Shown here piece by piece: positions 6,761-51,582 of a stretch of DNA of 64,000 nucleotides. The notes under the pieces are model-generated. The model did not search any database. It worked only from the letters and a program-made list of their open reading frames with translations, and was not told where the DNA came from. Numbering within the stretch: position 1 is the stretch's first letter; each line of letters begins with the position of its first letter. Both the position numbers and the translations under genes were made by a program. The stretch is from Octopus sinensis (lineage: Eukaryota): NCBI RefSeq assembly GCF_006345805.1, contig NW_021831284.1, positions 124,001-188,000 of the forward strand, given 5' to 3'.

Positions 6761-8675
6761 TTAGTAATAAGCATAAATCTCTTGTAATGTTTGTGGAGCC
6801 TTTGCATTCATGTGATTTGATTTAATAGTACAATATCCTTTTAAGTGCTTGTGGGTCTCACGCATAAAAATCCCTGAAGACCTGAAAATAAAAATACATT
6901 AAACTATACGTGAGATTTTCATCTAAAATTATATATATTTATAAAATAAAACCTTTAATTTTTCGACGGTATACAAATATTTCTAACAATGGAAGTCCAA
7001 CAAAAATAATTGTCGAAAAAAAGATCAGTAGAATGTACACGAGAGAAATAGATTTTTTTTCCTCTAAATTCATATACATTAAAAAAATTCACCAAAGTGC
7101 AAAAAAACTTTGATTGTATAATTATCTTCTAAAAATCCATCAGATAAAATGCAAGTGAGATTCATTGCTGGAGGATCATTTTTTGGAACATTGTTGGATT
7201 TCAAATAAAATAAAAAATTGCTTATATTTCCTTCAGATTTTATATTATAGGAGAGATCATTTTTTGTTGTATTTAGTACATTAAACAACCATTTGAAATT
7301 CATTTTTCTAATTGGGTCGACTTTTCCACCACATGAAATTTTATAATGATTTCTTCCGATCTTTTCAATTCGATTATAGTAAGGTAGGAATATAAATGGC
7401 GTTTCTATGATTTTGAGGTAAACCGTTTTAGCAGCTCTTGCAAATTTGTTGTAAACAAGACAACGAATGCTCATGGACTGAGTTACATTTATGATAGTAA
7501 ACGTTCTATTATCTTTAGACAAAAATGATATAAAATCAAGTGGATGTGTTCCTAAATCGAAATAGCAGTTGAATAGTACCGTATTCTACTGAATCCAAAT
7601 ACCACTTAATTTGGGGCTCAGGATATCCTCCTACCCAGGTGCACATAAAAGTCGCATTATCCCCTTTTGTTTTATTGAGTGAGACAAAATCATGGGAAAT
7701 AGAAGGTGATTCTAACATTAAAAAAATATATTACCGTAAAAAGAAAGTTTAAATTTTCTTTCAAGGTACGAATATTTATAATTCTTATACGAAGGAATGC
7801 AAATTAGTTCCCGGGTTGGATATGTCGCATTTACACCCACAAATAATCCGTCAGTGCCTATTAACGTTTTCCCCTCGTAATATGAAATCGTGTCATATAT
7901 TCTAAAATTAATATTATTTCACAAACTTTCCAAAAAATATACATGGATGAATTAATCCGGCTGTTTTAGAATTAATGAGTACATGATCTCCTCTTGAAAA
8001 TGTGTGTCCTCCCGAGGGTATGATATGTTTATTCATGGGCTTAACATTATGAAAATGAAAAATTTTTTTTTCATATTTGCCTTCACATATGAACTGACAA
8101 AATATATCCTCCTCGAGAAAATATTTAATGTAAAGATTGTTATTTTCCGTTTGCATTCTGTCATTTTTTGACTTGAACTTGATAATTTGTTTGAATCCAT
8201 TATTTGGGCAATATTTGTACCAGATGCAGTCAGTACTAACGCCTTTACTTTCTAAAGCTGCATAAGGGGACAAATAGTTGTAAAAAACTAGAATTATTCA
8301 CAATTTCGAAATACCAGTATATTTATTTAATGCCTCAACTTTAAATGGGAGAGATGTTTCCCGACCACATTTGTTTTCAACAGTGCAACTAAATATTCCT
8401 GATATGTTGTAGTCCTGATTGAATGTAAGATTTCTGCCATCTCTATAATAAGGTAAATCTTGAGTGAAGTCAATGAGAATCCCATCTTTGCTCCATCTAT
8501 AAATATATTATATAATTATCATTTACTTATATTCATGATCTGGTATACCTTCTATGGGACATTGTATGGTGTAGTTTAAGTAATTCAGAAAGTAAGTTGA
8601 GTCTGACATGTCCATAGTTGGAGGAAGACATTCAGCTATTATTTGAACAGATAATATCAATAGTATTAACAGCAT
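6761..8675 (-). CDS. Five-Ig-like-domain type I membrane protein, copy 1, long Tyr-motif tail
   Basis: Manual splicing gives an open frame: signal MLLILLILSVQIIAEC; D1 CPIE..WSKDG..FSCTVEN; D4 CTWVGGYPEPQIKW..CLVYN; D5 CGGKVDP..KW..CILSDG; TM ISLVYILLIFFSTIIFVGLPLL; tail ending LKGYCTIKSN..TLQEIYAYY*. Introns 23-30 nt, including a 13-nt microexon at 6910-6922. Confidence 0.85.
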
Positions 8676-9249
8676 TTCAATTTATTTGCGATCTAATTGC
8701 TACTTGTGTCATTGGTTTTTCTCTATTTATGGAAATATTTAAAATGTTTATAATTAGCGTTAATTATAAAAAATAAACTTTGCTGATAGTTTTTTCGTTT
8801 GTGTAAATCAATTTCTAGTTTTTCCTTATTTGGCTAAAAATTTATACAGCCAAACATGAACATAGTGAATTTCCCTTAATCACGGAACACAGTAGTTTTA
8901 ATTTCCTCTAAACTCAACTATAAAATATGATTTTTTAAACCGAAACAGATGTTGTTATTAACCAGTAGATTTTTTTAATTTTAATCTTATAAAAAAATTT
9001 TGAATTATTTAAGCTACGGTTTAGAAGAGTGATATGAACCTACATTTTTTTATATAAAAAATGCAGAACTCAAGACTCTGTATGCACATACAAAACTGTT
9101 TTTTGCGGCGACATTTATATCAATAACTCATGTTAGGCTGAACATAGCCTAAAACAATTTAGTCGAAATCGACTTTTTGATCAATAAAGAACATTATACA
9201 AACTTACTCGTGCAAAAGGATCAGAAGTGATTAGACATCGTTCTTTCTG

Positions 9250-9530
9250 CCAATCAAAAGGGATGATGGAAAATAAGCGACCAATCACGCCAATAATATC
9301 CACAAACCCGAATGATAAATATCTTACCGATTTGGTGAATCTAAGGTGTTATTAAGAAAGATATTATTGGGTATTTATTAGAAGTATTAAATTTTAGTTG
9401 CTGTTGACTCAATAGTTGCAACTTCAAAAAACTCAGAAGAAATATTATTTATCGAGAAAATCTTTTACACGATGGTCCTCCTCACATAGTTCATGCGGAT
9501 AATGGAAAATAGTTTAGGAACATAACTTCG
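9250..9530 (+). mobile_element. Degraded DDE integrase remnant (Ginger2/KRBA2-SCAND3-like)
   Basis: Reads KRPITPIISTNPNDKYLTDLVNL and GPPHIVHADNGK*FRN (integrase core D..DNG.EF pattern), with stops. Confidence 0.55.
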
Positions 9531-9665
9531 AATTTGCTTAACTTTCAAAATTCTAAAATGACCTTTCAGTTAAAGTTCAATATTTTAATCATATGCTTAA
9601 ATCTCTCAAAATCGATAATAGAAGAAATTACTCGCAGAAAAATTAAAGAAAACCAATATCAATGA

Positions 9666-10341
9666 TTATCTAATAACGGCAGGAACATCCACATCCATTT
9701 GGACATCTTGAGGCTTCAACTTTCCTGACTCCTCCATTTTCTTAGCCTGGATCCTCAGCCTCTTATCCTTCACATTCTTCCTCTTTGCATCAGCCAAATC
9801 ACTACTCATAAATAAAAACTGTCCACCTCATTTCTTTGAGCCTCTTTTGTTCTGACTGATTCTTATGAATATATTCCATAAGCGTTCTCTTACTCTTAAA
9901 TGTATTTCCCTTGCATTTCAGATATATTCGGTGATATCTGGATATTTAAAATAATTGGCAATACGTGTGACGGTCGATTTTTCCACTTTCCCTGTAGCTT
10001 TTCAGAAGACGACGTTGAATCCGAATTCTGTTGATCCACAGGCGTTTCTGAGGCATTCGAGCGTTAGCAGTGCCTCTCCTCTTTCCGATTCCAGTATGGC
10101 GACCCTTCCTTCTAGCTTCCAGTTTTATACGTATTCGGGCACGTGATTGAACTTTTACGGGCTTGCGGAAAATTATTCCGTTTTTTATCATTTTTCGAAC
10201 ACTTTGTCCTTGTGGGATATATTTTTAATATATACTTGAGTTGGCACTAGATATGTGCTGTGTCTCGTTTGAATCCAACCAAACACGTTTTTTCCCACAT
10301 TTAAGTATGTCAGCAGCTAATCTTCGTTGTAATCTCAGCAT
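9666..10341 (-). CDS. RPL19: 60S ribosomal protein L19 (eL19), 3 introns
   Basis: [57 protein letters not shown]; GT-AG introns of 25-27 nt. Confidence 0.97.
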
Positions 10342-10599
10342 TTCGTCTACTATTAAATTAAACACTACAAAACAAACAGCCACAAGAAAGGTGTACACGT
10401 GAAAATTTAAAATAATAATTAAAAAATAAAAGTTGTTAAGATTTTTTATGTTATAAATACATACAAATATTTAATTTGGTATATAAAGTTTTTTTCCTTT
10501 AGAACTTACAAATGTTGTTATTAATGCCACTTAAAGTTAGTACAAAAGGACAAAAAAAGCCGCTATTAAAACTAAAATTTTCGGATTTCAAAACCAGTT

Positions 10600-10760
10600 G
10601 AGTAATTGGCCAAAAGCTCTCAAAATCCTCTCAGAGATTGGTTTAATTACTTCGAGGAGTCACGACAGTTGCAAAACGAGCTGGCTTTTTCAACGGATAT
10701 CGCTCGCGATATTATGTGGAAACTGCTGTCCATCCGCACGGCGACTAATTCAAATTAATC
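10600..10760 (+). mobile_element. CRE-like 3' remnant
   Basis: WLFQRISLAILCGNC matches the CRE C-terminus WFRQRIGLAIVRGNA. Confidence 0.65.
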
Positions 10761-11329
10761 TTTATATTGCTATTCTTTACAAATTAACCATAGAAAAATT
10801 AGTATCTCATAAATATACTAACTCCGCGTACTAAAAGAAAGCTAGGAAAAGAGTAGACCACATAGCTCGGAGAATGTAAGTGATAGTGTGTTGGTGGACA
10901 GTTATCTCAAGCTAGCTGATTTACTTTAAGGGCCTGGATTTGATTCTTATAAGCAACCTGTGCAGAAAAGCTCGGATTGGACTGTCAGATATCAGAGTTA
11001 CTACGATCCCGCTAATCTGGGATTTTTCAATGGCAAGGCCAAACGTAACTAACCTGGACATCGATATTAACTTACGATTGGAGGTAGCGGTCCCAATCTC
11101 TATAATCTTCGTTATATGGTCGGGCTAATGTGTGAGCGTCATTCTCTGAATCTTCTACCTATCATCATTAACTATCCCGGACACCCGATACAGACCTAAT
11201 CTGGGAGATGGTGGCTCCAGAACGGTCATGCATCGTGAGCTCCTGCGTTAGAAGATCGGGCAGTTGATCGGTACAGAATCTGTAAATTCCCTAATTGACT
11301 AACGCTGGCACGAGACAGACAATCCGGCT

Positions 11330-11910: not shown

Positions 11911-11939
11911 TATCAACTTATTGAAGATAAGGAATATCT

Positions 11940-13020: not shown

Positions 13021-13491
13021 CTACCAAATAAAATCTTTATTTTCCTTTAAAGTGTGATTTATAGAGTATTGGTGTAGTGACCACAGATTTAACTCACTAC
13101 AAGCTCTTTTATAGTCTTTTATAGCTTCGTCAATCTCCTCTTCTGTAAAGCCAATGTAGCTACTTCTGCTTGGAGGTTCATCCCATTTTGGATCTTTATG
13201 AAGTGGTTTGCAGTCGGCAAATGCTTCGCCAAAAGTTGAACGATCTTTAAAACAATTATACATACGTGTGCGTTTTGGTGTGGGTTCATCTGGGTATTGA
13301 TATGGAATTGGTTCAACCCCAGATGAATTGTAAATAAAATCATAATCTAAGATCGCATCTCGTTGGGCTTGGAGTTCGTCCCGAATGGGTTGACAAAAAT
13401 CAAATGCATAATAAAATCCATTGTAGTTATATACATTATTATATCCACTGTAGTTGTATGCATTGTTATTTCCGCAGTAATTATTATACAT
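13021..13491 (-). CDS. Intronless orphan ORF (156 aa) with Tyr/Asn-rich N-terminus
   Basis: Long stop-free frame in AT-rich DNA starting MYNNYCGNNNAYNYSGYNNVYNYNGFYY; no family recognised. Confidence 0.45.
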   Translation of the reverse strand: MYNNYCGNNNAYNYSGYNNVYNYNGFYYAFDFCQPIRDELQAQRDAILDYDFIYNSSGVEPIPYQYPDEPTPKRTRMYNCFKDRSTFGEAFADCKPLHKDPKWDEPPSRSSYIGFTEEEIDEAIKDYKRACSELNLWSLHQYSINHTLKENKDFIW

Positions 13492-16375: not shown

Positions 16376-18127
16376 TTAAAAAATCAACTTTTTTCTATTT
16401 AAATTTCTTCGACGATAAATGAAAAATCCGACCAGTGAAAGACATATAAGAATAAACCCCGACCAAACAATCACAATAATATTGATATTCGTGTTTTGCA
16501 CTAATTTATACTAAATAAAAAACTTACCAAACGAAACTGTAATTGTTTGAGTGACTTCTAAAAATCCATCTGATATTATGCAGGTGAGAGGCGCATCTGA
16601 TAAATAAGTTTTTGAGAAATTTTTTGAATTTTCATTAAAGAAGAATTTGCTGATATTTTTTTCAGACGTTATAAAAAAGACTGAATCATCCACATTGTGT
16701 CGTACTGGCGTTCCATTGTATAACCAGTTTATTTTCATTTCTCTGAGTGGATCGACAGTTCCTTTACACACGATTCCGATTTGGTTCAACTCCTCCACAC
16801 GGATACGATTGAAATGTGACATGAATATTGTTGGCTTTTCTATAATCTTGACGTAGACTGTTTTTGCAGCTTGTGAAAATGCATTATAAACAAAACATCG
16901 AACACTCATGGACCGGGAAGTATTGATTATAGTAAACGTTTTATTGTCTTCAGATAAAAACGATTTAAATTCAATTTCAGTTGTACCTGAGTGTAATTAA
17001 TTGCTTAAATACCATATTCCACGGAATTTAAATACCACTTTATGGCTGGTTCTGGATACCCTTCTTTAGAAGAACATACAAATGTTGCGTTTTCTCCTGT
17101 TGTTACATTTAATGAACGAAATGAATCAGAAATAGAAGGAGGTTCTACAAATTTTTAATGATATTTAACCATAAATAGAAAGTGTAAAATTTTCTCCAGA
17201 ATGAAACAATTCCGTTTCATGGCTTAAAGGGACACATAATATTGTTCTGGTTGGCTGTTTCACATTTGTATTCACAGGTAAGTAGTTAGTTCCTACTAAG
17301 GTCTCATTTTCATAATATAAAATTTGGTCGTATAGACTAAAATATATATTTATGAACAAACCTCCCATAAAATAAACATGGCTGGATTTTCTCCACCGAC
17401 GAATTGTACTTGATTTTTACGTTTTCTCCTCTTGTAAAGACGTGGACCAAATAAAAAGAGAAACCTTTTTTAAATTAATAAACAAGAAAACTGATTTCTG
17501 GAGGCTGAATATAGAAAGTTTTGTTCTCATATTTTCCTTCGCAAACATAAGAAAATTTTGAATCATCCTTAACAAAGTATTTTATATACAAATCGTTATT
17601 CTCCACTATTAATCTGTCCGTTATTGACGTAGAATTAATAATTGACTTTTTTCCATCGTATATACTATTTCTATACCACGTGCAGTCCGTGCTAATGCCT
17701 TCACTCGTTAATATAGTATTAAGAAAATTTTGTGCTGAGACAACTAAAAAAATAAATACAATAAATACAATTATTTTTAATCAAAGTCTCCACTTTGAAT
17801 GAAAGAGATGTTTCTCGACCATATTTGTTTTCCACTGAGCAGGTAAAAATTTCTGACTTGTTGTAGTCTTTGTCAAATATGAGATTTCTGCCATCTCTAT
17901 TATAAAGCAATTCTTCTGCGAAATCAATGGGGACACCATCTTTAATCCATCTGTATATATTATATAAATATTATGCACTTGTATTCGTATACGGAACTTG
18001 CCTCTATTGGACATTCTATAGTGTGGTTTAAATAATTCAAAAATTTTGTCTCATCTGTCATCTCCATGGTTGGAGGAAAATTGGCAGTAAATATTTGTGG
18101 AAATAAAACAAGCAAATTAAACAGCAT
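16376..18127 (-). CDS. Five-Ig-like-domain type I membrane protein, copy 2, short tail
   Basis: Open spliced frame from MLFNLLVLFPQIFTA through five domains homologous to copy 1 (D1 about 59/87 identical by hand). TM IIVIVWSGFILICLSLVGFFIY, then RRRNLNRKKLIF*. An additional 3' splice is possible. Confidence 0.85.
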
Positions 18128-29252: not shown

Positions 29253-31100
29253 CTTCCCTGAAAGGGAATGTAGTCATTCCGTCAGGACGCTTTCCATCAC
29301 TCCGACAGAGACCGACTGGGTCTAGAGTGGAGGGGAAACCTGCCTACTCTAGTGCCCTTTTCACGACGTCATTGAGGTGAGTGTGGCGAGGAATTCTGCC
29401 AGCGCTCTTCTTGCACGATAGGGCGTGCAAACCGTTCGGCGAGATCGTGGACCCGCACCGGCTGACAGATGTCCAGGCCCAAGCGTAAGCAAACACCAAT
29501 CCGTAAGGATTCGTCGTCAAGAAGTAGTCCCGTACTAGGGGTAGGGAGTGCTTTGAGCCAGTCTCCCGTATGCGGCTGGCAAGCGCAGTTTAAAGATCCC
29601 AGTTGGACTTAGTCCAACTTTGACCGAAGTTTGCACAGAGTGCCTGAGCAAAAGATTTTGACCCAGTTCTTTTGAACTGAAGGGATCGTCGGAAAATCCA
29701 GACCGAGTGACAACCAAATACGGGAGGCTGATGAGAATTCGGAAAGCTCGTTAAGTTCGAGAGAGGGAAAAAGAACCGAGCAGACCGAATTCCTGGATGC
29801 CGAGGTCGAAGAGAGATAGCAAGGAAAGGCTAGGTCCTTGCAGGAGCGAATCCCGATCCCCCCGAAACGTATAGGTAGGCACGCACGGGTAAGACCAACG
29901 CCAGTGAATCTCGAATTAAGATGGAATATCAGCGAAGTGTGGATTAGATTGTCGATTGCAAATAAAGAATTGGGAGCCACGAAACAAGGCGAAGAACGGA
30001 GGATGTATGTAAGCCTCGGGATAAAAAGGAAATTCCTCAGCAAGAAAAACGCCATGTGCGAGTCAAGCCCCCGGATCCGCTAGATAAGCAGCTTGAATTC
30101 TTCCCATTTAGACGATAAGGTCTTTAAAATTCCATGTTCGGAAATTGGTGACCCCAGAATAACTAGGTCGTTGGAAGGTGTGAGCCTTAACCCAGCAATC
30201 AGACCGCATAGGGAAGAAAATGTGTGAGAAAGAGCCCCCGAGGATAGCGAAATATTTACGAGTTCGCATTTACGACCATTTAAAGATAGACCGATCTCCG
30301 CGAAACCAGACGTGATTTTGTTAATGTTTTCCATAACGACATCCAAAGGTCCTCCAAAAGTAACATCGTCCAAGTACCAAAAATTGACGTTGGACGCAAG
30401 GTTGCGTGCAATATGGTCAATATGGTCAACAGAGAGGGCAAACAGCAATGGCCCCAGAGGGTCACTCTGCTGAATACCGCATTCGGACATAATGGTTTCG
30501 CCATGAAAGAGGAGACAGCTTGGGGAAGAATACGCAAGATTTACGATTGGCCAGAGCTCTGGGGATCGTTTTGAGACCACCTCGAGCATTTGGTCACGAC
30601 GGACACAATTGAAAGCATTACTGACATCCAGTTTGACAATAAACTCACAATCGTTGGCTTTAGAATGTAGAGTTGTCGGGTGCCGTGCGCTAGGATTTCG
30701 CAGGAACCCTTAACGCCAACACCGTACTGGAAGGATAAGAACTCCGAACTCATAGTTGGAACCACCCTGAATGACATGATTTTGGCTGAGAGCCTTCTGA
30801 AGACGTTGCCGATAGCAATCGGTCTCACACCGCCCTCGGCTTTCTTCAGGGCAATAAGCCCCGCAGAAAAGAGAAGCTCACTTGCGACGGCTGGGATCGT
30901 GCCGGACACAATGCGCGAACAAAGACGGGTGATGGAGGATAATAAGTCCCTACCGGAATCGAGGGTTAGGCGTGATACGAGATCCCGGAGATGGATCCTG
31001 TCTTGTCTGAGGATTGAGTTATTGAGTCACGTGGAAAAGAGGAAGGTCAGTGAGGTCATTTTTCGCGTTGTGAGTTGTGGGGGGAGTTCGGTAAACAGTC
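29253..31100 (-). mobile_element. CRE-clade retrotransposon with RT domain, frameshifted and truncated at both ends
   Basis: LIALKKAEGGVRPIAIG, QYGVG, GIQQSDPLGPLLF, WYLDDVTFGG, LPIRFGGIGIR, RPDGMTTFPF. Confidence 0.92.
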
Positions 31101-33049: not shown

Positions 33050-34935
33050 GTCAGTGATTTCTCTTCTTCGCTTAAAAGAAGAGTTTGCAACAAAATTCTC
33101 ATCATTTTCCATTTCTGCGTCAAAGTAATTGTTCAACTGAGTGTCCTCACGACATGCCAGCTCCGCAAGTTGATTGGCGGCAGAGGCCGTACTCCTCGTT
33201 GTCTACCTTCATCCCATGTCTGTGTTCAATAAGCATACTCTCTAGAGTCCTCTTCAGCACAACCGACTGATGTATGTCCTCGTTCCTTTTCAATGGATAA
33301 CTTGTCCATATGACTTTTAAAGAACTTTGAGACAACTCCATCCCATGTCAAGACAATTGGAATAATCTTCACTTTTGCTTCATAGAGAACTGACAGTTCG
33401 TTTGCAAGCAGGTCATATTTGTGAAATTTCTCCACTTCCACTTGCTTTAAACGTCTTGCGAGTAACTCCCACTTCGATTAAATGAATTTCTCTTTTCCTC
33501 TTGTCATAAACGAAGATATCAGGTTTATTGAATTGAACCTTTGTTTCAGTCATAATTGAAGTGTCAACTCTGATTTCGACATTATGGGTCGACATTGTTG
33601 ACACGACTGAATGGCCTTTCAATTTCCTGCTTCGTTTTATTCCATACATTCGACACAAGTGGAGATGAATACACTTTACCACTTCGTTGTGTCTTCGGAG
33701 ATAATCACTGTTTAGCATCCTACCACACCGCGTGGCTAGATGGTCAACAGTCTGCCTGCTTTTTTTTGCAGTGGACGCATAGTGATCCCGTGTATGCAAA
33801 GAACAAATTCCTATCTTGCAAAAGACAGTACAATGCTTCGCTCGTGGACCATTGTTCCCTTTCGATAGCATTGCGAAGAAGTAGATATGTCGACATCTGA
33901 TTCCTCCATACATTTGAACATCACCGAGTGTAGTGATTTACTGTTAATTTCGTTAAGCAAGAGTTTCCTTTGTGCGTCCTTCAGTAACTCATGGTCAGAT
34001 TTTCCCTGCCGACAGCTGCATATTTGGAGACAAGAAATTCTGCGATTGTGGCTAAGTGCCATTTTTTTCCTTTTATTACTCGCAGAATACCGACCTCCGC
34101 AGACAGGTAGTCGACTGTTTTTCCAAACTTTTAAGAAACTGGAAGAGCATTAATTCGCTTTTGAAAGAAATTGAGGCAAGTCCTCTTCCAGGGTCTTGCG
34201 GTCCAAATACAACCTCTCCTTATTTGCAGGCTGGAGGTGTAACTTGAGAGTCGTAAGTAATCGGCGTATTTGTTGGTCAATCTCATCAATTCGTAGGTTC
34301 GATATTGATTAGCCCAATATAATAATTATATAGGGATAATGCATATTCATTGATTCCACGAAACAAATTTACAGCATTCAGTTTGTGTTTTGACAACATA
34401 GTTATCCTCTTCTTGACATTCTCCAATATGGAGTCCATAACTTTATTCTTGAGAACATTACTTCCGCCATCTTCAAGTACACCCAAGTAGCGATATCCGT
34501 TGATTCCATCGACAGTCTCACAGCATGATAAAGATTCCACATTAGATGCTGATTTTTCGGAATTCATCTCTAGACCGACACTTTCAAAAAATCCATTAAC
34601 AGCCTCCATCATTTTGACTAACACATCTTCTTTGAGGGCAACTATTTTCAGATCGTCAATAAAGAAGAAATGATTGGTGGAGTATGTCAACATATTGGGA
34701 TCTTCCCGATAATTTCGAGTTTGGGAAACATGGAGTTAAGCATCCTGCTTAGGGGATCCATCGCCATAACGAATAGCAGCGGGGACAATGAATCTCCTTG
34801 AGTATTCCCCGGCTTAACTTTACTTTCCCAATTCTTTTCCATCGATATGTAAGTTTACTGTCCACTTCTTGACTATGTTCTTTACAAAGCTGACAATCCA
34901 ATGTGGTATTCCAGAGCAATCCAATGAAACTAAGA
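33050..34935 (-). mobile_element. R4/Dong-like non-LTR retrotransposon, 5'-truncated within RT, frameshifted
   Basis: GILQGDSLSPLLF, NHFFFIDDLK, YRYLGVLE, TVDHLATRCG..RRHNEV, FNKPDIFVYDK..IEVG..EKFHKYDLLANEL. Confidence 0.92.
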
Positions 34936-39604: not shown

Positions 39605-41640
39605 TTAGTGTAAGTTATAATTAAATAAATCCTTTTTGTTTTTGCGTTTATTTTGACGACACGAGTTTGTTGCGAAATATAGCACGATAATAATTATCAG
39701 CACTGGCAAAAAACCCCATAGCATTCTGAAAAAAACCGTAATTTTTGATGGCACTAAATTATAGCCATTTACCCAACTTACCAAATTTCAATGAAACGGT
39801 GATTGTGTGTCTTGCTTCTAGAATCCCATCTGAAACGATGCACGTGAGATTGGTAGGGGGTATGTCAATTTCATTTTTGATGTCTTATTAAATAAAAAAC
39901 TGCTTCCGCCTTTCTTGAATATTATAGAGTAGACGTAGTTTTTTCTGCTGATTTGTGCCGGTTTCCCGCCAAATAACCAGCTTATTTTCATTTTCCTGAG
40001 TGTATCAACAGTTCCATCACATGTAATTTCATGAAGATTTAGCTGAGTCATTTCTGTAAAATTTAAATATGGCATAAATATTTTCGGCCTTTCTATAGTT
40101 TTGAGGTAAACTGTTTTAGCAGTTTGTGAATATTCGTTGTGAACAAGGCAACGAACACTCATAGATCGGCTCGCATTGATTATATTAAGTGTAGTGTTTT
40201 CCATAGACAAATAAGACTTAAAATCCAGTTTTGTTGTGCCTAAATATTGTTAGAAGCATGAAGTACCATATTCCACTGAATCCAAATACCATGTTATTGT
40301 GGGTACTGGGTACCCTGATTTCCAGAAACAGCGGAATACTGCATTATCTCCTTGAGTTACATTTAGCGAGACCAATAAATCGGAAATAGAAGGGGGTTCT
40401 AATAATGTTTAAAAGAAATTAAACCGTAAATTGAAACAGTGAATTTATATTCGATTGGATCATGTAAGATAGTATTATTTGTATCCAAAATGGTATTGTT
40501 TGTGTCAAAAGTCATGCTATTCGCATCCAGAGTGATATTGTTTGCAACAAGAATGGTGTTATTGACATCCACAATCGTGTTATTCGTATCCAGGATAGTA
40601 TTATTTGTATCCAGGATAGTATTATTTGTATCCAGAATGGTGTTAGTCCAATTCTGAATGTTATTATTTGCTTCCAGAATGGTATTGTCGGCATCGAGAA
40701 TGGTATTATTTGTATCGAAAATTTCTTTACTGATGCAGAGAAAAGTCCGTGTTGGCATTTTTATTTTCCCGTTAAAATCAAAGTGATTCGATTCTAATAA
40801 TGTTGTTTTTCCTTCTTTTACTTCTGAATAGACAATTTCGTCGAGTTTTCTAAAATTTTCATTCCAGTAAAAACCTCCCAAAAAACAGACAGGGTTTAAT
40901 ATTTTCGGACATTCCATACTTAATTATGACATTTTGTCCCCTTGTAAAAACATGTGTCAGATCAAACGGAGTTGCTTAAATATTTGAAACCGAACAAACT
41001 TGTAACGTTATTTTCAAAGTGAAATTCTTTACTTTCATATTTTCCCTCGCAAATAAAAGAACAGTTTATATCTTCTTCGATGAAGTATCTTATGTATAAA
41101 TCGTTATTTTCGACTATAAGTCTATCAGTGTTCAATGAGGAAGTAATTATTGATTTGGTTCCGTTTTTTTCACAATATTTATACCATGAGCACTCGGTGC
41201 TAACTCCCTCACTTCTGAGTATTGCGTAAGGTTTTTCATAAGAGGAAAAGACTAAAATTATTTTGAATTTAATAAATACCCGTGTTTTTAATTAGAGGCT
41301 CCACTTTGAATGGAAGAGATATTTCTCGACCATGTTTGTTTTCAACAGCGCAACTAAAAATCTCTGATATAGAGTAAATCTTGTTGAATATGAGATTTCG
41401 ACCATTACTTCTATAAGGTAAATTCTGTGTAAAATCAATGGGAACTCCTCCTTTAAACCATCTATAAATATATTATGTAATTATCATGTACTTGTATTCA
41501 TCGCCTGGATTAGCTTTTATGGGACATTGTATAACGTAGCTTAACTGATTCAGATAGTAAGTTGTGTCAGACATATGCATAGTTGGAGGAAAAAAAGCAG
41601 TCGCAGTATGAAACAAAAATATCAGGATATTCAATAGCAT
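39605..41640 (-). CDS. Five-Ig-like-domain type I membrane protein, copy 3, with heptad insertion and short tail; one 1-nt homopolymer frameshift in D5
   Basis: Signal MLLNILIFLFHTATA, homologous D1-D5, TM MLWGFLPVLIIIIVLYFA, tail CRQNKRKNKKDLFNYNLH*. The frame in D5 is restored by one extra base in the 5-T run near 39875. Confidence 0.82.
40465..40716 (-). repeat. 12 tandem 21-bp coding repeats (consensus DTNNTIL)
   Basis: ORF 40399-40917 residues 68-151: DTNNTIL DADNTIL EANNNIQ NWTNTIL DTNNTIL DTNNTIL DTNNTIV DVNNTIL VANNITL DANSMTF DTNNTIL DTNNTIL. Confidence 0.95.
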
Positions 41641-43495: not shown

Positions 43496-43634
43496 ATTTT
43501 TACATGTCTATGAAAGTGCCAAATACTCAAGAATTGAATAAATAGTGGTATAAAGGGTCATTATTTTTACATGTCTATGAAAGTGCCAAATACTCAAGAA
43601 TTGAATAAATAGTGGTACAAGGGGTCATTATTTT
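43496..43634. repeat. Tandem duplication, 67-bp unit x2
   Basis: TACATGTCTATGAAAGTGCCAAATACTCAAGAATTGAATAAATAGTGGTA.. occurs at 43501 and 43568 with about 2 mismatches. Confidence 0.9.
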
Positions 43635-44651: not shown

Positions 44652-44799
44652 ATCTCTCTCCTTTTAGAAAAAAAGTTTTCTACTAATTTCTCACTCTTCT
44701 CGTTCTCTATCTCTCCGCCGAACAAAGTTGTTACAGTAAATATTTTCCTATTTGCTAACTCTGTTAGTTGCCATTCCTTTATTTTCAGAACATTTTGTT
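44652..44799. repeat. Left copy of target duplication flanking the CRE element (segment A 44652-44748, segment B 44750-44799)
   Basis: B is identical to 47950-47999; A is the reverse complement of 47855-47951 with a few differences. Confidence 0.9.
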
Positions 44800-47700
44800 T
44801 TTTTAACAATCTATACATTTATTTCAGAAACGAGTTAATTATAAGACAGGCTAGTTTTCCGCGGCTGACGACATAATCGAATAGGCATTGCCGCGAACAA
44901 CGGCCAAACCTATTCTTTGTCGAAGCCATGTTGTTCCCTCTAATCGTTTTTTATATGAGCAATTTTTCGTCCGATTTCTTTAAGGAATGACTCAGTTACA
45001 GTTCCTGTGACACCGAAGTCTCGACTGCCACAGGAACAAAGCGGTACGAATCCCCGATTGTGGAATATTTGGCAATTTTGCTTTTTCAGCAAAGTTAGCG
45101 GCCGATCCAGGGACGAACGAAAAGGAAATGTGATGTTCTTTAAAGTAAAAGTGTCCACGCATGTCGAGTCCCAAACTAGTGGTTTTCCCCCAGAGTAGGG
45201 GAAAAGAGTCACTCCATCTGGCCTTCTCCCATCATTACGGTTAAGACCCGCAGGTTCCAGTCTTGCTGGGAATCCTGCTGCCTCTAGGGCACGTCGTATC
45301 ACATCATTCAATGCGGCATGTCGAGGGGTTCGACCTGCACTTCTTCCGCAGGATAGAGGGTGCAGTCCTTTGGCATCAACAAGGCCTCCGCAACGACAGC
45401 CGTGAACTTGGCAAATATCCAGTCCCAGACGAAGTGCTACACCGATTCTCATAGAATTATTGTCCAATAGATTGCCAAGGGCAGGACACGGGAGAGCATC
45501 AAGCCACGCGCCACTATGATGGCGTGCTCCGGACAAGAGACATGTGAGTCGATGCTGATTGCCCCTCTGTTTGTATTTTTGGACGATGTCGTTGCATAAA
45601 ATCGAATCCCAGTTAGTCTGTTTGAATGTCTCCGCCGGAATCATCAACCAAGTTCCACTCCACCGTTCACAAGCTCTAGCGAACTCCGGCTCCAAGGAAA
45701 ATTCAGAAGGGTTACGTAGAATTTCCTGGACCAGATCCCAGCTGCTTGAGAGCGACGAGAGATAAGCTGGTGCTGCTACTTCCAATGCGGACCTGATTTC
45801 GTTGGCAGTTTACACTGAATCCATTCCAGATCATCAAAACGAACGTTTAAAATAGTTTCGGCCGTGTCTTTCAGTGTCTGATCAAGTAATAAAAGGCTGT
45901 CTCGTTGTGCATAGCAAGGGCAGCTCCTTAGAGCATAAAGAAGTCTTCGCATGCAGATACTCGCTCTCATGAAAAAAAACGCAGTATGCGCATCAAGGAG
46001 GGATATTTGTTGTGTAAATAGTGATAGGTTTTCTGCTTTCTTCCGAAGGTGTTTACGCAATTCTGCGTCACCAAGTGGACCACCGAGGAAATATACCTCG
46101 TCCCGAGCCGTGGTAGAAATCCCTTTAAGCAAATGGTTGAACTGTTGAGTAATTCGCATGAATTCGTCATTGGAGTACGTAATATTGATCAATTCCGATT
46201 TGTTTGTATTAATTTCCAAACCGAGGTTTTTTAAAGCAGGAGCAATTTGCGAAATTCCTTCGTAAACAGATTCCCAAGTTCCACCGATAGTGGCATCGTC
46301 GAGATACCAGAGATTGAGTTCAGTTCCAGTTGAACGTGCAACATCATCGATGGCCAACGAAAACAGTAAAGGTCCTAGTGGATCTCCTTGCTGTACTCCA
46401 GTTCGTGACTTGATAATTTCGTTACCGAAGACTAGAGACGATTCTTTCCCATAAGAGAGGTTCACTATCTGAATTATCTCCGGAACTCTCTTCCAGCACG
46501 ATCATAAGTCGATCTCGTCGCAGTGTGTTGAAAGCATTAGATATGTCTATTTTGAGCCCCATGCGGGGGGTTTTCGCACTACAGCCAAAGTAGCATCTTG
46601 TCGCATGCACAGAGGCCTCACATCCATTTGTAATACCGACTCCCAATTGAACTGGCGAAAGTTCTCCGCTTATCCGCGGACAGACTCTTTTAGCGACAAT
46701 CTTTGCCGCAAGTCTTCTGAAGTAATTAATAACTGCGATCGGTCTTACTCCCCCGTCATTCTTTTTAAAGGCCAATAGGTGCGCAAAGAATAGTAGTTCC
46801 CTTGCATAAGAAGGGATCTTTCCATTGACAATTTTAGAAATCAGCGACGTAATGGATTTAACCAAATTTGAACTATGAACTGATCTCGCAGTAAAATCTT
46901 TGACATGTCCCGGTCGCAGGCCCTCCAAGCCTCCACTGCTGCTTGGAGCAAACGACACGATTCCGGAAATCACCTCCTGTTCGGTGATGATAATGCTGAG
47001 CAAATTTTCCGGCATAGTGAATTCTTGGTAGTCCGTAGGTGGGTAAGGGTGTTTACGTATCAGATGTTCGATCACTGAAGGAGTCGGGACTAAAACCGTA
47101 TCGTCGTTGCTCACGACGCGCAAAGCAGCACGGATATCACCCTCAATGAGTTTCCTATTCACTCTGTCTCTTATGCTATCCTGGTTTAGAGTTATATTTC
47201 GTCTTTCATTCAGCTTTGTGTGGTGTACTTTGTCGTCAATTGATTTTATATTTCTCTTGATAATACAGGATATGGACTCATTCTGCGTAGCGTTTTTGAA
47301 TTGTACTCCAAGAGCAAGAGGTGCAAAGCTCAGCAATTGAACCAAAGAGGCCAAGCTGTTAGTGGAGAGAGCATTATCAATTAGCTGGCTAAGACATGAA
47401 GCAGCAGAAATACGGGCGGATTTCGGAATCCTTAGAGGAATCTTCCTGGGCTTCCGTAGCTCCGATAGGTGTAGAAGGATGAGATCTGTATTTGAGGGAA
47501 GATCAGGCGGGTTAGGCGCATATTTATTTCAGGAGGATTGAAATTCGGTTTGTACAAGAACTCATGCATCGACGACAGTCCCATTTGTATAGCGTCTTTG
47601 CTGCTTTGTTGGTGATTTTAACACATGAAAGATGGAAAAATTCACCGCAAGATGAACAGTTCATGCCAAACCGGCGTTTGTTGCTCAGTTCGCAGGAAGA

Positions 47701-47854
47701 GCATATCGTGTTCTCTCTTTTTGGAATGATGTTCGGAATGATAGTTTCACTTAACAACATGCATTGTTCTTCATTGTAGTTGTCCGTAAGCATCAAAGTT
47801 TCTTGTTTATTCACAGCAAAATTCAACCCCACATCAGCCATCACGTAATTCATT
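44800..47854 (-). mobile_element. Near full-length CRE-clade retrotransposon (PHD finger, RT, Zn knuckle, RLE), several frameshifts
   Basis: CSSCELSNK..CSSCGEFFHLSCV..WDCRRC; FKKNDGGVRPIAV; GVQQGDPLGPLLF; WYLDDATIGG; RRPDGVTLFPYSGGKPLVWD; 3' AATAAA and a short A-run at 44798-44804. Confidence 0.93.
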
Positions 47855-47999
47855 GGAAAATATTTACTGTAACAACTTTGTTCAGCGGAGAGATAGAGAA
47901 CGAGGAGAGGAGAAATTAGTAGAAAACTTTTTTTTCTAAAAGGAGAGAGATTTGCTAACTCTGTTAGTTGCCATTCCTTTATTTTCAGAACATTTTGTT
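47855..47999. repeat. Right copy of target duplication (inverted A followed by direct B)
   Basis: 47855-47951 is the reverse complement of 44652-44748; 47950-47999 equals 44750-44799. Confidence 0.9.
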
Positions 48000-48499
48000 G
48001 ATTTACATAAAAATATTCTATTATTTGCTCAATTCTGTTATTCGCAGATTTTTAAAATAAAATTTCTTTTTGATAATAATTGTTGTTATGCTTGGGCCGT
48101 GTAGAAAAAGATTCCTCATTCCAAATTAAGCCTCTCCTTATTGGAGTGTCTTAATTATATGGTAGCTGCGTATATCAACAAGAATCTATCTAACTGATTG
48201 GTGCAGATTTCGACAATAGTCTATGCTGGAAAAGTGTGCTAAATATTGAGTATGAAAAATTCTGAAAAGTCTAATTGGAGTATTGATATGAAGGAAAAAT
48301 TGAGCAGTGGAGAGCAAGGTTGGGCCATATCGAAGTTCTTTGTAAAATCTCTCACGGCTGAAAAAAAGCCACTTGTTTGAATGCATTATTTCTTGTTGGA
48401 TATAAAAGAAAAGAAAAAGCAAATAATAACTTCCTTAATTAATGAAAAACCCATGTTGAATAAAAAGAGGTTATCTACGCACGAGAAAGGAAAGGATTC

Positions 48500-49000
48500 T
48501 GACTAGATAATCAAACATTTGAGCTTAATCGGAAAGCTTTTTACAAATGATTGAAGGGAGGCGAGACTAAAAATTTTATTCAAGTGGATAGTGAAGAGTT
48601 TGGAACATATTGGCAGAATATGTGGCGAAAAAAACAGTTGAGTGTTCAGAATATGGAGATTGAAAACAGGATGATTGGAATAGAGGACGTAACAGTCTAC
48701 GTTTTGAAAAGTTTATTTCAGGAGATCGTCAAATATTTGCTAAGTGGAAGAACCCAGGCTCCGATGGTGTGTATAATTTCTTTCTGAAGTTCACATTACT
48801 TCATGAGTCAATTTTCGGACAAATAATTAATGTCATAGAAGGAAAACTACTCCAGGAGATTGTTTCTAAACAGGGGTGACACATTTTATTCCAAAGTGTG
48901 AAAACCCGGTGTGAACTAAGGTAGTCCAAGAAATCATCTCAAGCAATGGTGTCCCCAAAAGAGTTACGGCCTATAACATGTATGGGGTCTCTCTATGAAC
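48500..49000 (+). mobile_element. Degraded R4/Dong-like pre-RT fragment
   Basis: FGTYWQNMW and KWKNPGSDGVYNFFLK-like motifs across shifted frames. Confidence 0.55.
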
Positions 49001-49621
49001 TAATGATAAAATGTTTAAATACTAAGCTTGGAGAGTTTGTGGAATTTTTCTCTGAAAACAATGAAGCTCTGCTTTAATGAACAGAGTTAAACAAGGAAAA
49101 TGGAACAGACTCCACGCTGCATAAATCTACGGCAAAAAGAATTTGATTTAATCGCAGAAATTTATACAATATGCATTTTCTCAACTCAGTGAGCGAACAG
49201 AGGCATACAATCTACTATAAAGAAAACCCTTGAGAGGATGATTGTCTTTTATAGAAAGAAAGTTGAATTAAAATTATTAAAGAAATGTTTATTTTATTTG
49301 AGTTGTTATTTCTGAATCTGTTTGCTACATAAACAGTGTTGTGAGTGAAACTTATTTAGCCTGTCATTTCGTATTATACGTACTCCGATTGTTAATGTTT
49401 AGAAAACTCCAATATGTGAGAAAGATGTACAGCCCAAGATACCCACGAAATCTCTTTTGTCAGGATTGTGTTAAACCTTAGAAATTTTAAGGGGTTCCAC
49501 CATGGCCTTCATAATGACTTCGGGAAAAGTTTATGAATCATCTTGTCTTTGACAGGAAAATTATCGCATTCTAAATAACTATTCTTTTTAAGTTTTTTTA
49601 ATTTATTTAAAAATTGTATAT

Positions 49622-51582
49622 TCAGTAGTACTCATAGATCTCTTGTAATGTTAGTGGACCTTTGCTTCGATTCATATTTGATTTGACGTAACAATATCCT
49701 TTTAATCGGTTTTGATTCTTGCGAATAAAGTCTGTCAAGGGTCTGAAAATAAAAATACATTAAACTATACTTGGAATTTTTGCCTAAAATTATGTATATT
49801 TATAAAATAAAACCTGTAATTTTTTGACGATATACAAATTTTTTTAATAAAAAGATTTCAATAAAAATAATTGCCGACAGAACAATCAACAAAATGTTCA
49901 CATGAGACACCGGGATTTTTTTTCTCTCTATGTTCATATCAATTAATCAATCTTACCAAAAAGAAGAGAAACTGTAACTGAATGATTTTTTTCCAGAAAT
50001 CCATCTGATATGATACACGTGAGAATAATCGATGGAGAATCAATTATTGGTTTATTGTAGGATGTTAGGTTAAATATGAAACTACTCCTATTTTCGGCAG
50101 CTATGATATAATAGAGGAAATCATTTTTTATGTGTTTCATTTGCTTTCCATTGAGCAACCAATTTATTTTTATTTTTCGCACCGGGTCAACTGTTCCATC
50201 ACAAGTAATTTTATATATATTTGACGTAATCATATCAATTCGGTACGAATAAGGCATATTTATTATTGGTTCTTTAATGATCTTAAGATAAACTGTTTTT
50301 GCAGATTTTGCAAAAGCATTGGAAACGAGGCATTTAACACTCATAGACCGAGTTGGATTGATAACTTTCAATGTGGTTTTATCTGTTGATAAAGTTGAAT
50401 TAAAGTCAAGAATGTTTGTTCCTGAAACTAGTATCAGCAAATAATAATACCATATTCTACTGAATCCAAATACCAGGTTATTGTAGGTTTTGGATATCCT
50501 GCTTTTAAAAAACAAAAAAAAGTGGCGTTATCCTTTTCTGTTACATTTACCGATTTTAAGGAATCGGAAATTAGAGGTGATTCTAAAATTTTTTAATAAA
50601 ATTTAACCATAAATTGAAATTGTGAAATATTCTCTTTTATTAAAAATTTCTTCTCCGTAGAATGAAGGAACACAGGAAAATTCTGTATTCATCAGCTCTT
50701 CATTTGCATTCAAATTCATTCCGTCAATGTCTACTAATATATCTTCTTTGTAATATAAAATTGAGTCATACAGACTAAAATTAATATTTATGAATAAACT
50801 TTCCAAAAAATAAACAAGGATGAATTTTCTCAACGGAATTAAGCTCGATTGTTATGTTTTGACCTCTAGGAAAAGTATGAACCAGGAATAGGTTAAGGCC
50901 TTTTTGTCAAAGAACAAAAAAACCTGTTATTTCTTGAACAAAAGAAAACTTTTTTTCTTCATAATCTCCCTGGCAGACATAGAAACAAGATGAGTCATCT
51001 CTGTGGAAGTATTTTATGTATAAATCGTTATTCTCAACGATCAATCTGTCGTTTATCGACTCAAAAATTATCAATGTATTTTCTTCTTTTTCTGGACATG
51101 TTTTATACCACAAGCATTTTGTACTAACGCCTTCAGTCCTAAGTACAGTAAAATAACGATCTTGAAGGTCGTAGACTAGAAAAAGCATGCTTAAACATTA
51201 CTATTTTCTTTTATTAATGGTTCAACTTTTATTGGAAGAGATGTTTCTCTGCCACATTCATTTTCAGCAGTACAGCTGAACACTCCTGCGACTTTAAAGT
51301 TTTCGTTAAATATCAATTTTCTGCCATCTTGATGATAAGGAAGATTTCCAGTAAAGTTAATGGGGATGCCCGCTTTAGCCCAGCTATATTTAAGTTTAGA
51401 TAAAAATACGTGTATCCATCAACTGGATTCATTTCTATAGGACATTCTATGACGTATTTCAAATAATTCAGCATATATGTTGTTTCAGACATGTCCATTA
51501 TAGGGGGAAAACAAGTATTAATTGCTGGACCAATTAATAAATGCATTATTAGAAATATATGGACCTGATCTAGAAAATCCAT
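49622..51582 (-). CDS. Five-Ig-like-domain type I membrane protein, copy 4, long Tyr-motif tail
   Basis: Open spliced frame: D1 CPIE..WAKAG..FSCTAEN, D4 CFLKAGYPKPTITW..CLVSN, D5 CDGTVDP..CIISDG, TM VNILLIVLSAIIFIEIFLL, tail ending LKGYCYVKSN..TLQEIYEYY*. 13-nt microexon at 49771-49783. Start codon could be the first or second Met. Confidence 0.85.

What the first reader, a model, noticed from the sequence alone, without database searches (positions are those of the whole stretch)
6882..49813. Introns more conserved than the exons they flank, with mosaic sharing between paralogs
Seen: between copies 1 and 4 the last two introns are 28/28 (6882-6909 vs 49743-49770) and 29/30 (6923-6952 vs 49784-49813) identical, while the 13-nt microexon between them matches at only 7/13 (DENLT vs GKNSK). 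At the 5' end, copy 1 shares intron 1 with copy 3 (28/30) but not with copy 4. Inference: diversifying selection on coding sequence and/or patchwork gene conversion, both typical of immune-receptor and variant-antigen families. Constraint on microexon splicing signals is an alternative explanation.
Basis: partly seen in the sequence, partly recalled or inferred. Interest (0 to 1): 0.7.

Follow-up and report, generated by a model that had tools for sequence, protein, structure and literature searches.

The report
Frozen mini-introns around a diverged microexon
In a cluster of old duplicated cell-surface (immunoglobulin-type) genes from what is almost certainly a dicyemid parasite hidden in an octopus genome assembly, the two 28-30 base introns around a 13-base exon have stayed virtually identical between two copies while everything around them diverged, most likely because splicing such a tiny exon depends on the exact intron sequences.

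Summary
On the minus strand, copies 1 and 4 of a four-copy Ig-domain gene family share their last two introns at 29/30 and 28/28, while the 13-nt exon between them matches at 7/13. Copies 1 and 3 share intron 1 at 28/30. This is far beyond chance: unrelated or non-homologous mini-introns from the same DNA reach at most 0.75-0.77 identity.

- The paralogs are ancient (dS 1.2-2.0).
- dN/dS is 0.22-0.37, in the tail as well.
- Exon site patterns are star-like.
- No other significant identical patch exists in any pair.

Conservation stops at the splice junctions. A decayed fifth copy has lost these introns. Homologous mini-introns in general are more alike than the null. Intron-limited gene conversion remains a weaker rival.

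The host contig belongs to the Octopus sinensis assembly but has dicyemid hallmarks (27-nt introns). No relatives could be found in public data, so everything rests on one paralog pair. Interest is moderate.

The parts
6761..8675 (-). Copy 1 (c1): intact IgSF type I membrane protein gene of 564 aa with 8 mini-introns, a long cytoplasmic tail, and no intron 3
   Evidence: Curated model gives an open ORF. Pfam Ig_3, Ig_2 and I-set hits are above their cut-offs.
6923..6952 (-). c1 intron 8 (30 nt, GT..AG), upstream of the microexon
   Evidence: 29/30 identical to c4 I8.
6910..6922 (-). c1 13-nt microexon (ATGAAAATCTCAC; with split codons it encodes DENLT)
   Evidence: 7/13 identical to c4. It is required to reach the conserved last-exon frame.
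6882..6909 (-). c1 intron 9 (28 nt, GT..AG), downstream of the microexon
   Evidence: 28/28 identical to c4 I9, and bounded by mismatches at both junctions.
6761..6881 (-). c1 last exon (cytoplasmic tail ...LKGYCTIKSN...TLQEIYAYY*)
   Evidence: 90/126 nt and 21/39 aa identical to c4. Mismatches are enriched at third codon positions.
6953..7063 (-). c1 transmembrane exon (E8)
   Evidence: 84/114 identical to c4. The last ~27 nt before I8 are about 88% identical.
8497..8526 (-). c1 intron 1 (30 nt)
   Evidence: 28/30 vs c3, 23/30 vs c2, 18/31 vs c4.
16376..18127 (-). Copy 2 (c2): intact gene of 522 aa with 7 introns and a short tail that ends just after the TM segment
   Evidence: No remnant of the tail module lies downstream.
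39605..41640 (-). Copy 3 (c3): short-tail copy with an apparent 1-nt frameshift in exon 7 (near 39880) and an in-frame 21-nt tandem-repeat insertion
41462..41491 (-). c3 intron 1 (30 nt)
   Evidence: 28/30 identical to c1 I1.
49622..51582 (-). Copy 4 (c4): intact gene of 572 aa with 9 introns and a long tail like that of c1
49784..49813 (-). c4 intron 8 (30 nt)
   Evidence: One T-to-C difference from c1.
49771..49783 (-). c4 13-nt microexon (GCAAAAATTCCAA; GKNSK)
49743..49770 (-). c4 intron 9 (28 nt)
   Evidence: Identical to c1 I9.
49622..49742 (-). c4 last exon (...LKGYCYVKSN...TLQEIYEYY*)
52418..52680 (-). Decayed fifth copy fragment (f5): end of exon 7, I7 and the TM exon, with frameshifts
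   Evidence: 74% identical to c1 over 276 nt. I7 is 24/29 and E8 83/114 vs c1, but I8 is largely deleted and there is no I9.

Best explanation
The two introns are held nearly invariant by purifying selection on their RNA sequence, because they are the whole splicing context of a 13-nt exon.

In this genome introns are about 27 nt and carry almost no generic signal (GTW...TAG). Recognition must therefore rely on each intron's own sequence, and homologous mini-introns are in general under constraint. A 13-nt exon cannot carry enhancers of its own, and it leaves too little room for the factors at the upstream 3' splice site and the downstream 5' splice site to bind independently. I8 and I9 must therefore supply all the information for correct, probably ordered, removal. 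They may also control a retention switch: an unspliced I8 gives a stop after four codons (...GFIL*), a short-tail form like copies 2 and 3.

The microexon and neighbouring tail exons code for a loosely constrained juxtamembrane linker and drifted freely.

Shown: the identity pattern, its significance, the junction-sharp boundaries, the age of the paralogs, and the absence of positive selection. Inferred: that the constraint is splicing-related.
For: (1) I8+I9 differ at 1/58 sites, while synonymous sites of the same two genes are saturated (pS 0.59 gene-wide, 0.52 in the tail exons).
(2) The two extreme introns are exactly the pair flanking the only microexon. The other six shared c1-c4 introns are at 0.56-0.80.
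(3) Conservation stops at the splice junctions. There are mismatches at the first exon base on three of four sides, and I9 is a 28-nt identical run that is exactly the intron.
(4) Homologous mini-introns as a class are more alike than non-homologous ones (0.69 vs 0.59, p=1.5e-9; still p~1e-6 without the six best; also true for intron cores), so ultra-short introns here are generally constrained.
(5) Natural control: the pseudogene fragment f5 is closer to c1 than c4 is, yet it has lost I8 and I9. Copy 2, which reads through the equivalent position to a stop, shows no recognisable I8 or I9.
(6) The microexon must be included to reach the conserved C-terminus.
(7) In vertebrates, microexon regulation lies mainly in the flanking intronic sequence, which is highly conserved (bioRxiv 10.1101/2024.09.17.613571).
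Against: - It rests on one paralog pair, with no RNA-seq and no orthologues.
- Complete invariance of 57/58 positions is more than known splice signals need. Other introns of the same genes splice (presumably) with diverged sequences.
- Intron 1 (c1-c3, 28/30) and I4/I5 (c2-c4, 22/25 and 21/25) are also unusually similar without flanking a microexon, so the microexon cannot be the whole story.
- No significant RNA structure was found (z -0.1 to -0.85).
- No motif known from SRRM3/4-type microexons (UGC) is present in I8 or I9.
Confidence: 0.55

Rival explanations
1. Intron-limited homogenisation: short-tract non-allelic gene conversion between the tandem paralogs keeps or has recently made the introns identical. 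Selection for different tail sequences removes converted exons. This is the model proposed for primate L/M opsin and MHC introns.
For: - Sawyer-type run test is significant for c1-c4 (28-nt run, P=0.003-0.004).
- The copies lie in one tandem cluster 43 kb apart.
- Different introns are shared by different pairs: I1 c1-c3, I4/I5 c2-c4, I8/I9 c1-c4.
- The tail shows slightly more synonymous identity than the ectodomain (same codon at 33/42 vs 135/227 conserved residues).
Against: - The flanks are only ~65% identical, which is poor substrate for conversion.
- Two separate tracts of 28-30 nt would each have to end exactly at splice junctions.
- No exon patch of comparable length exists in any of the six pairs beyond what protein motifs explain.
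- The skipped 13-nt exon encodes an apparently unconstrained linker (DENLT vs GKNSK), so there is little reason for selection to reject its conversion.
- Quartet patterns give no significant segment incongruence.
Confidence: 0.2
2. The two blocks are conserved for a function unrelated to microexon splicing. Candidates are a DNA regulatory element, or the excised 28-30 nt introns acting as small RNAs or protein-binding RNAs.
For: - Every position is conserved, which is more typical of a specific binding or pairing target than of degenerate splice signals.
- The block size of 28-30 nt.
- The boundaries coincide with the excised RNA species.
Against: - No Rfam family matches in the window.
- No significant fold.
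- No sense or antisense copy or target elsewhere in 69 kb.
- There is no positive evidence of any kind.
Confidence: 0.12
3. Diversifying (positive) selection drove rapid exon divergence from a recently shared tail, leaving neutral introns unchanged.
For: The microexon has 4 of 5 residues different. The family is a lineage-specific cell-surface IgSF cluster in a parasite.
Against: - Tail omega is 0.37 and tail pS is 0.52, so synonymous sites next to the introns have diverged as well.
- Gene-wide omega is 0.22-0.33.
- Windows with pN/pS > 1 are at noise level.
- The other c1-c4 introns are at null similarity, so the genes are not young.
Confidence: 0.05
4. Assembly or polishing artefact that copied short stretches between paralogs.
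For: The contig is a non-target (parasite) sequence in a long-read assembly. Copy 3 has a possible homopolymer indel.
Against: Mis-polishing would not respect splice junctions. It would also need reads to align across 65%-identical flanks. And the pattern (one T/C difference in I8, intact frames) looks biological.
Confidence: 0.03

Closest known systems
Vertebrate and insect (neuronal, SRRM3/4-dependent) microexons with highly conserved flanking intronic sequence
   Same: A tiny exon (3-27 nt) whose recognition is encoded mainly in the neighbouring intron sequence, which is unusually conserved (Irimia et al. 2014, from my own knowledge).
   Different: - There the microexon itself is also conserved, usually a multiple of 3, and alternatively included.
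- Here it is 13 nt (skipping would shift the frame) and its sequence is free.
- The comparison here is between ancient paralogs, not orthologues.
- The conserved unit is the complete 28-30 nt intron.
- No UGC motif is present.
Intron homogenisation by gene conversion with exon differences kept by selection (primate L/M opsins, MHC class I/II introns; from my own knowledge)
   Same: Tandem paralogs whose introns are more alike than their exons.
   Different: Those genes are more than 90-95% identical overall, with tracts of hundreds of bases. Here the background is 65% identity with saturated dS, and the islands are 28-30 nt and junction-sharp.
Accelerated exon evolution with conserved introns in venom PLA2, three-finger toxin and conotoxin genes (from my own knowledge)
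   Same: Introns are more conserved than the coding sequence in a multigene family.
   Different: In those families the genes are young and dN/dS exceeds 1. Here dN/dS is 0.2-0.4 and the synonymous sites are saturated.
Schistosoma micro-exon genes (MEGs; from my own knowledge)
   Same: Microexons in a parasitic spiralian.
   Different: MEGs have many symmetric microexons (multiples of 3) with long introns, encode secreted proteins, and vary by exon skipping. Here there is a single 13-nt exon in an IgSF membrane protein with 28-30 nt introns.
Ultra-short introns of Dicyema (median 27 bp) and the 'minimal introns are not junk' idea
   Same: Intron length distribution and weak generic splice motifs match. 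There is general constraint on mini-introns.
   Different: In the papers read here I saw no mention of sequence conservation of individual mini-introns across paralogs, nor of microexon-flanking introns, in dicyemids.

Membership tests
Immunoglobulin superfamily, type I membrane protein | Ig-domain profile matches above the curated threshold | tested here: met
   Pfam Ig_3 54.7 bits (cut-off 30), Ig_2 41.2 (27), I-set 41.0 (23.7) on c1. Remote hits are hemicentin-like and L1-like Ig-repeat proteins.
Immunoglobulin superfamily, type I membrane protein | Signal peptide, single TM segment, cytoplasmic tail | tested here: inconclusive
   A hydrophobic N-terminus and one hydrophobic stretch followed by YRRK are seen by eye in the proteins. 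No predictor was run. The AF2 model of exon 7 has low confidence (pLDDT 52).
   omega 0.22-0.33 gene-wide, 0.37 in the tail. Sliding windows are rarely above 1.
   There is no [SIVL]xYxx[IVL] and no YxxL/I-x6-8-YxxL/I in the c1 or c4 tails (inspection of the proteins). Only a conserved YxxPhi (YCTI/YCYV) and a C-terminal EIYxYY are present.
Gene conversion between paralogs | Identical tract longer than expected from overall divergence | tested here: met
   28-nt run, permutation P=0.003-0.004.
Gene conversion between paralogs | Tracts placed without regard to exon/intron boundaries, with exon patches also present | tested here: not met
   Boundaries coincide with splice junctions. There is no significant exon run in any pair.
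Gene conversion between paralogs | Significant phylogenetic incongruence between segments | tested here: inconclusive
   Quartet counts are star-like: 42/64/60 in total. My hand chi-square on the counts for 5' vs 3' heterogeneity gives p~0.14. Only four taxa are available.
SRRM3/4-type regulated microexon | Exon 3-27 nt with conserved flanking introns | tested here: met
   13 nt; flanks are 57/58 identical.
SRRM3/4-type regulated microexon | Frame-preserving length and a conserved exon sequence | tested here: not met
   13 is not a multiple of 3. The exon is 7/13 identical.
SRRM3/4-type regulated microexon | UGC element upstream of the 3' splice site | tested here: not met
   There is no TGC in I8 (GTTTTATTTTATAAATATATATAATTTTAG), read directly from the sequence.
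Dicyemid (Dicyema) genome | Introns mostly under 30 nt (median about 27) | tested here: met
   31 family introns have mean length 26.9 nt and 25 unrelated introns 27.4 nt. The literature gives a median of 27 bp, and such introns are unique among non-myxozoan animals.
Dicyemid (Dicyema) genome | Association with a cephalopod host, and not the host's own sequence | tested here: met
   The contig is VCDQ01000570.1 of the O. sinensis assembly. Its PPIL1 is only 67% identical to that of O. bimaculoides. D. japonicum was collected from O. sinensis.
Dicyemid (Dicyema) genome | Sequence match to a reference dicyemid genome or transcriptome | not testable with these tools
   No dicyemid sequences are present in the searchable collections.

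The most novel reading that the evidence does not exclude
Whole mini-introns behave as units of inheritance or function that are independent of their exons. Either an RNA-level mechanism copies intron sequence between paralogous transcripts or genes, or the excised 28-30 nt introns are themselves functional RNAs. In both cases identity would be kept exactly from GT to AG while the surrounding coding sequence is free to change.
Probability: 0.07. Interest if true: 0.85.

Novelty: new variant of a known kind. Interest (0 to 1): 0.42.

Why it matters
Animals with introns under 30 nt are known only from dicyemids and some myxozoans, and how such introns are recognised with almost no consensus signal is unknown. 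A pair of ancient paralogs in which two complete mini-introns are frozen while the 13-nt exon between them is free is a natural mutagenesis experiment. It says that in this system the information for splicing a microexon sits in the introns, at essentially every position. With the dicyemid genomes and transcriptomes in hand, this becomes directly testable genome-wide.

Practically, the finding also flags an 854-kb parasite contig inside a widely used octopus reference assembly.

Tried and rejected
- Universal splice motif: rejected by two nulls and by pattern searches.
- Younger tail module: rejected; tail pS is 0.52 and dS 0.90.
- Diversifying selection: rejected.
- Exon-level mosaic or recombination: not demonstrable. 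Site patterns are star-like and per-exon pS is near saturation.
- Conserved RNA structure: folds are not better than shuffles (z -0.1 to -0.85 for the I8-microexon-I9 region; +1.45 for c3 I1). A weak I8:I9 A/U stem that loops out the microexon appears in both copies, and the single I8 T-to-C change would turn a U.G into a C-G pair. This is only a lead.
- Known RNA families: none in the window.
- Remnants of the tail module downstream of copies 2 and 3: none.
- Finding more family members or orthologues failed by every route:
  - k-mer protein search;
  - full HMMER profile search of 1.84 billion representatives, which gave only remote Ig-repeat proteins;
  - exact I9 scan and protein-pattern scan of the metagenome contigs;
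  - extending the contig to the left through the Ste24-like gene, which is not on record.
- The AlphaFold model of exon 7 had low confidence (pLDDT 52), so no fold search was run.

Full report
**What the window is.** The cyclophilin gene at 58518-59006(-) is on record on contig VCDQ01000570.1 (854,231 bp) of GCA_006345805.1. The window corresponds to positions 124001-188000 of that record. That assembly is Octopus sinensis, but the DNA is not octopus-like:
- GC is about 30% outside the transposon fragments.
- The PPIL1 protein is only 67% identical to that of O. bimaculoides and about 70% to those of gastropods.
- Genes are interrupted by GT..AG introns of 19-35 nt. Mean length is 26.9 nt for 31 family introns and 27.4 nt for 25 introns of unrelated genes.

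Among animals, introns under 30 bp are reported only for myxobolid myxozoans and Dicyema japonicum (PMC13644364). Dicyema sp. has a median intron of 27 bp (PMC6543705). D. japonicum has a repeat-rich (49%, with LINEs) 67.5-Mb genome and was itself collected from O. sinensis (PMC6736024). I therefore infer that the contig comes from a dicyemid kidney parasite co-assembled with its host. No reference dicyemid sequence was available to confirm this.

**The gene family.** A self-comparison finds four paralogs on the minus strand plus a fragment:

| Copy | Coordinates | State |
|---|---|---|
| c1 | 8675-6761 | intact |
| c2 | 18127-16376 | intact, short tail |
| c3 | 41640-~39605 | frameshifted, short tail |
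| c4 | 51582-49622 | intact |
| f5 | 52418-52680 | decayed fragment |

Homology-guided splicing gives intact ORFs for c1 (564 aa), c2 (522 aa) and c4 (572 aa). Exon lengths are almost invariant (149/182/252/100/167/132/459 nt). c3 has a 1-nt frame problem in exon 7 and an in-frame 21-nt tandem-repeat insertion. The proteins have an N-terminal hydrophobic leader, Ig domains (Pfam Ig_3, Ig_2 and I-set above threshold), one TM segment and a tail.

Only c1 and c4 continue after the TM exon through I8, a 13-nt exon and I9 into a 121-nt last exon (…LKGYCxΦKSN…TLQEIYxYY*). c2 and c3 stop shortly after the TM segment, and nothing resembling the tail module lies downstream of them.

No close relative exists in public protein collections. 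The k-mer search found nothing. A full HMMER profile search of 1.84 billion representatives found only remote Ig-repeat proteins, with a best E-value of 1.5e-19 and none at or below 1e-30 (hemicentin-like, L1-like). This is a lineage-specific IgSF cluster.

**Checking the observation.**
- c1-c4 I9 is 28/28, I8 is 29/30, and the microexon is 7/13 (DENLT vs GKNSK).
- c1-c3 intron 1 is 28/30 and c1-c4 intron 1 is 18/31.

The microexon is real in the sense that only the frame it creates is open in the last exon of both copies. That frame ends at aligned stops, gives 21/39 identical residues, and shows third-position-biased mismatches of 5/8/13. Skipping the microexon would shift the frame into early stops.

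**Is it more than chance or generic signal?** Yes.
- Non-homologous intron pairs within the family, aligned the same way, give 0.59 ± 0.06 with a maximum of 0.77 (n=424).
- Mini-introns from unrelated genes in the window reach at most 0.71, 0.75 and 0.74 against I8, I9 and I1. The only generic signal is GTW at the 5' end and (T)TAG at the 3' end.
- The three sequences occur only at their homologous sites in 69 kb, even allowing six mismatches.
- P(≥57/58) is 5e-6 at p=0.77 and 1e-9 at p=0.66.
- Introns differ from the microexon (Fisher p=8e-5) and from 90 nt of adjacent exon, which is 58/90 identical (p=2e-7).
- In the 1,910-column c1-c4 alignment (64.8% identity) the longest identical run is I9 itself (28 nt, permutation P=0.003-0.004).

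The title's generalisation is too broad. Most of the 41 homologous intron pairs (0.54-0.77) are about as similar as the exons (0.60-0.76). Three pairs stand far out: I9, I8 and I1 c1-c3. Four more lie at or above the null's 0.767 maximum: I4 c2-c4 22/25, I5 c2-c4 21/25, I4 c1-c4 20/25, and I5 c3-c4 20/26 (0.77), which only just exceeds it.

**Age and selection.** Synonymous divergence is saturated for every pair (pS 0.59-0.70, dS 1.2-2.0). dN is about 0.4, omega is 0.22-0.33, and amino-acid identity is 47-51%. The c1-c4 tail exons have pS 0.52, pN 0.27 and omega 0.37, so they are only slightly less diverged than the ectodomain. Per-exon pS is 0.41-0.90 for all pairs. Thirty-codon windows exceed pN/pS = 1 only at noise level.

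So the genes are old and under ordinary purifying selection. The tail is not young, and diversifying selection is not what separates exon from intron here.

**Mosaicism and gene conversion.** Parsimony-informative site patterns are star-like in every exon, with totals of 42/64/60 for the three quartet topologies. There is at most a weak trend: 13|24 in the middle of the gene and 14|23 in exon 7. No pair other than c1-c4 has a significant identical run, and the one long exon run (23 nt) encodes the conserved WYLDSVEY motif.

The intron-level sharing is real (I1 among c1/c2/c3, I4 among c1/c2/c4, I5 among c2/c3/c4, I8/I9 in c1/c4). But each of those introns is shared by three copies or by both copies that possess it. 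That looks more like slow divergence with occasional remodelling of one copy than like pairwise patches.

**Where conservation stops.** Identity ends at the splice junctions:
- After I8: …TTTTAG|ATG vs …TTTTAG|GCA.
- Before I9: CAC|GT vs CAA|GT.
- After I9: CAG|GTCTTC vs CAG|ACCCTT.

Only the last ~27 nt of the TM exon before I8 are also well conserved (about 88%). That region encodes the stop-transfer FVYR(R/Q)KI. A DNA-level process would not be expected to respect three of four junctions to the base. An RNA-level function of the intron would.

**Controls inside the window.** The pseudogene fragment f5 is closer to c1 than c4 is (74% over 276 nt; I7 24/29, TM exon 83/114). Yet its I8 is mostly deleted and I9 is absent. 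c2 reads through the equivalent position to a stop and has no recognisable I8. Homologous mini-introns as a class are significantly more alike than the null (0.69 vs 0.59, p=1.5e-9; p≈1e-6 without the six best; same result for intron cores without GT and NAG). This is at a level of divergence where synonymous sites are near saturation, so it points to general constraint on ultra-short introns.

**Mechanism.** I conclude, with moderate confidence (0.55), that I8 and I9 are held by purifying selection because they are the whole splicing context of a 13-nt exon in a genome that uses intron definition with minimal generic signals. The inferred steps are these:
- The exon is too short to hold enhancers.
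- Thirteen nucleotides leave little room for independent binding at the upstream 3' splice site and the downstream 5' splice site, so removal is probably ordered and depends on both introns.
- Retention of I8 would give …GFIL*, a short-tail protein like c2 and c3, so the introns may also set a long-tail/short-tail ratio.

The analogy is the conserved intronic flanks of vertebrate microexons, where regulation lies mainly in the flanking introns. This locus is not a member of that SRRM3/4 class: its length is not a multiple of 3, the exon sequence is not conserved, and there is no UGC element. RNA folding gave no significant structure (z -0.1 to -0.85). A weak I8:I9 A/U stem that loops out the microexon appears in both copies, but it is only a lead.

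**Rivals.**
- Intron-limited gene conversion with selection against exon conversion (0.2). It is supported by the run test and the tandem arrangement. It is weakened by the 65% flanks, the junction-sharp tracts, the absence of exon patches, and the apparently unconstrained microexon.
- Another function of the blocks, such as a regulatory DNA element or a small RNA (0.12), with no positive evidence.
- Diversifying selection (0.05).
- Artefact (0.03).

The decisive discriminator between constraint and conversion is the comparison of orthologues in other Dicyema genomes with paralogs within genomes. I could not run it because no dicyemid data are reachable.

**Verdict.** The feature is real and statistically robust. 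It is a new variant of a known kind of phenomenon, seen in a barely studied lineage with the shortest introns of any bilaterian. It rests on a single paralog pair, so interest is moderate (0.42).

Noticed in passing
whole window (= VCDQ01000570.1:124001-188000 of GCA_006345805.1): An 854-kb contig of the Octopus sinensis reference assembly appears to be dicyemid parasite DNA rather than octopus. It has 27-nt introns and about 30% GC, its PPIL1 is only 67% identical to the octopus protein, and D. japonicum is known from this host. The octopus assembly may hold a substantial part of a dicyemid genome.
   Followed up: partly
40472-40716 (-), inside exon 5 of copy 3: In-frame tandem repeat: period 21 nt, 11.7 copies, about 70% matches. 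It encodes (T/A)NNTILD heptads rich in N-glycosylation sequons and is absent from the other copies.
   Followed up: partly
about 39880 (-), exon 7 of copy 3: Net 1-nt frameshift next to an A-run. Conserved residues (NLTCIVSDGILE) continue in the other frame, so this is either a very recent pseudogenisation or a long-read indel error.
   Followed up: no
8287-7927 (-), copy 1: Copy 1 lacks intron 3. Its exons 3 and 4 are fused into one 361-nt exon, 9 nt longer than 252+100, which suggests imprecise intron loss or exonisation.
   Followed up: no
52350-52410 and 52817-52877: The decayed fifth gene fragment is bracketed by 61-nt direct repeats (85% identical) and abuts transposon-like sequence. It may have been moved or captured by a mobile element.
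   Followed up: no
4062-5276(-), 30080-30589(-), 44940-47354(-), 33413-33913(-), 62329-62937(-): GC-rich (41-48%) fragments of non-LTR retrotransposons. Three ORFs (30080-30589, 45776-46465, 46422-47354) match Pfam RVT_1; only 45776-46465 passes the curated cut-off (36.7 vs 29.6 bits). The ORFs at 4062-5276 and 44940-45785 have no Pfam hit, but their C-terminal region (…RPDG…VWD…) reads to me like an R2/NeSL-type restriction-like endonuclease. Several are broken into successive ORFs.
   Followed up: partly
1-1495 (+): 3' part of a Ste24-like CAAX prenyl protease gene (Pfam Peptidase_M48) with several 22-30 nt introns. It runs off the left end of the window and is not present in the protein collection.
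   Followed up: partly
58518-59006 (-): Intronless PPIL1-type cyclophilin gene. It is the only gene called on record in the 20 kb fetched around it (L001, window 48518-69006), which also holds copy 4 and f5. This suggests that standard annotation misses the mini-intron genes.
   Followed up: no
13021-13491 (-): 156-aa ORF with an N/Y-rich low-complexity N-terminus (MYNNYCGNNNAYNYSGYNN…) and no Pfam match.
   Followed up: no
43496-43634: Two nearly identical (97%) tandem copies of a 67-nt unit in an intergenic or transposon region.
   Followed up: no
6923-6952 / 49784-49813 (-): If intron 8 is retained, both long-tail genes terminate after four extra codons (…GFIL*). That mimics the short tails of copies 2 and 3 and is a possible long-tail/short-tail isoform switch (read from the sequences).
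   Followed up: no
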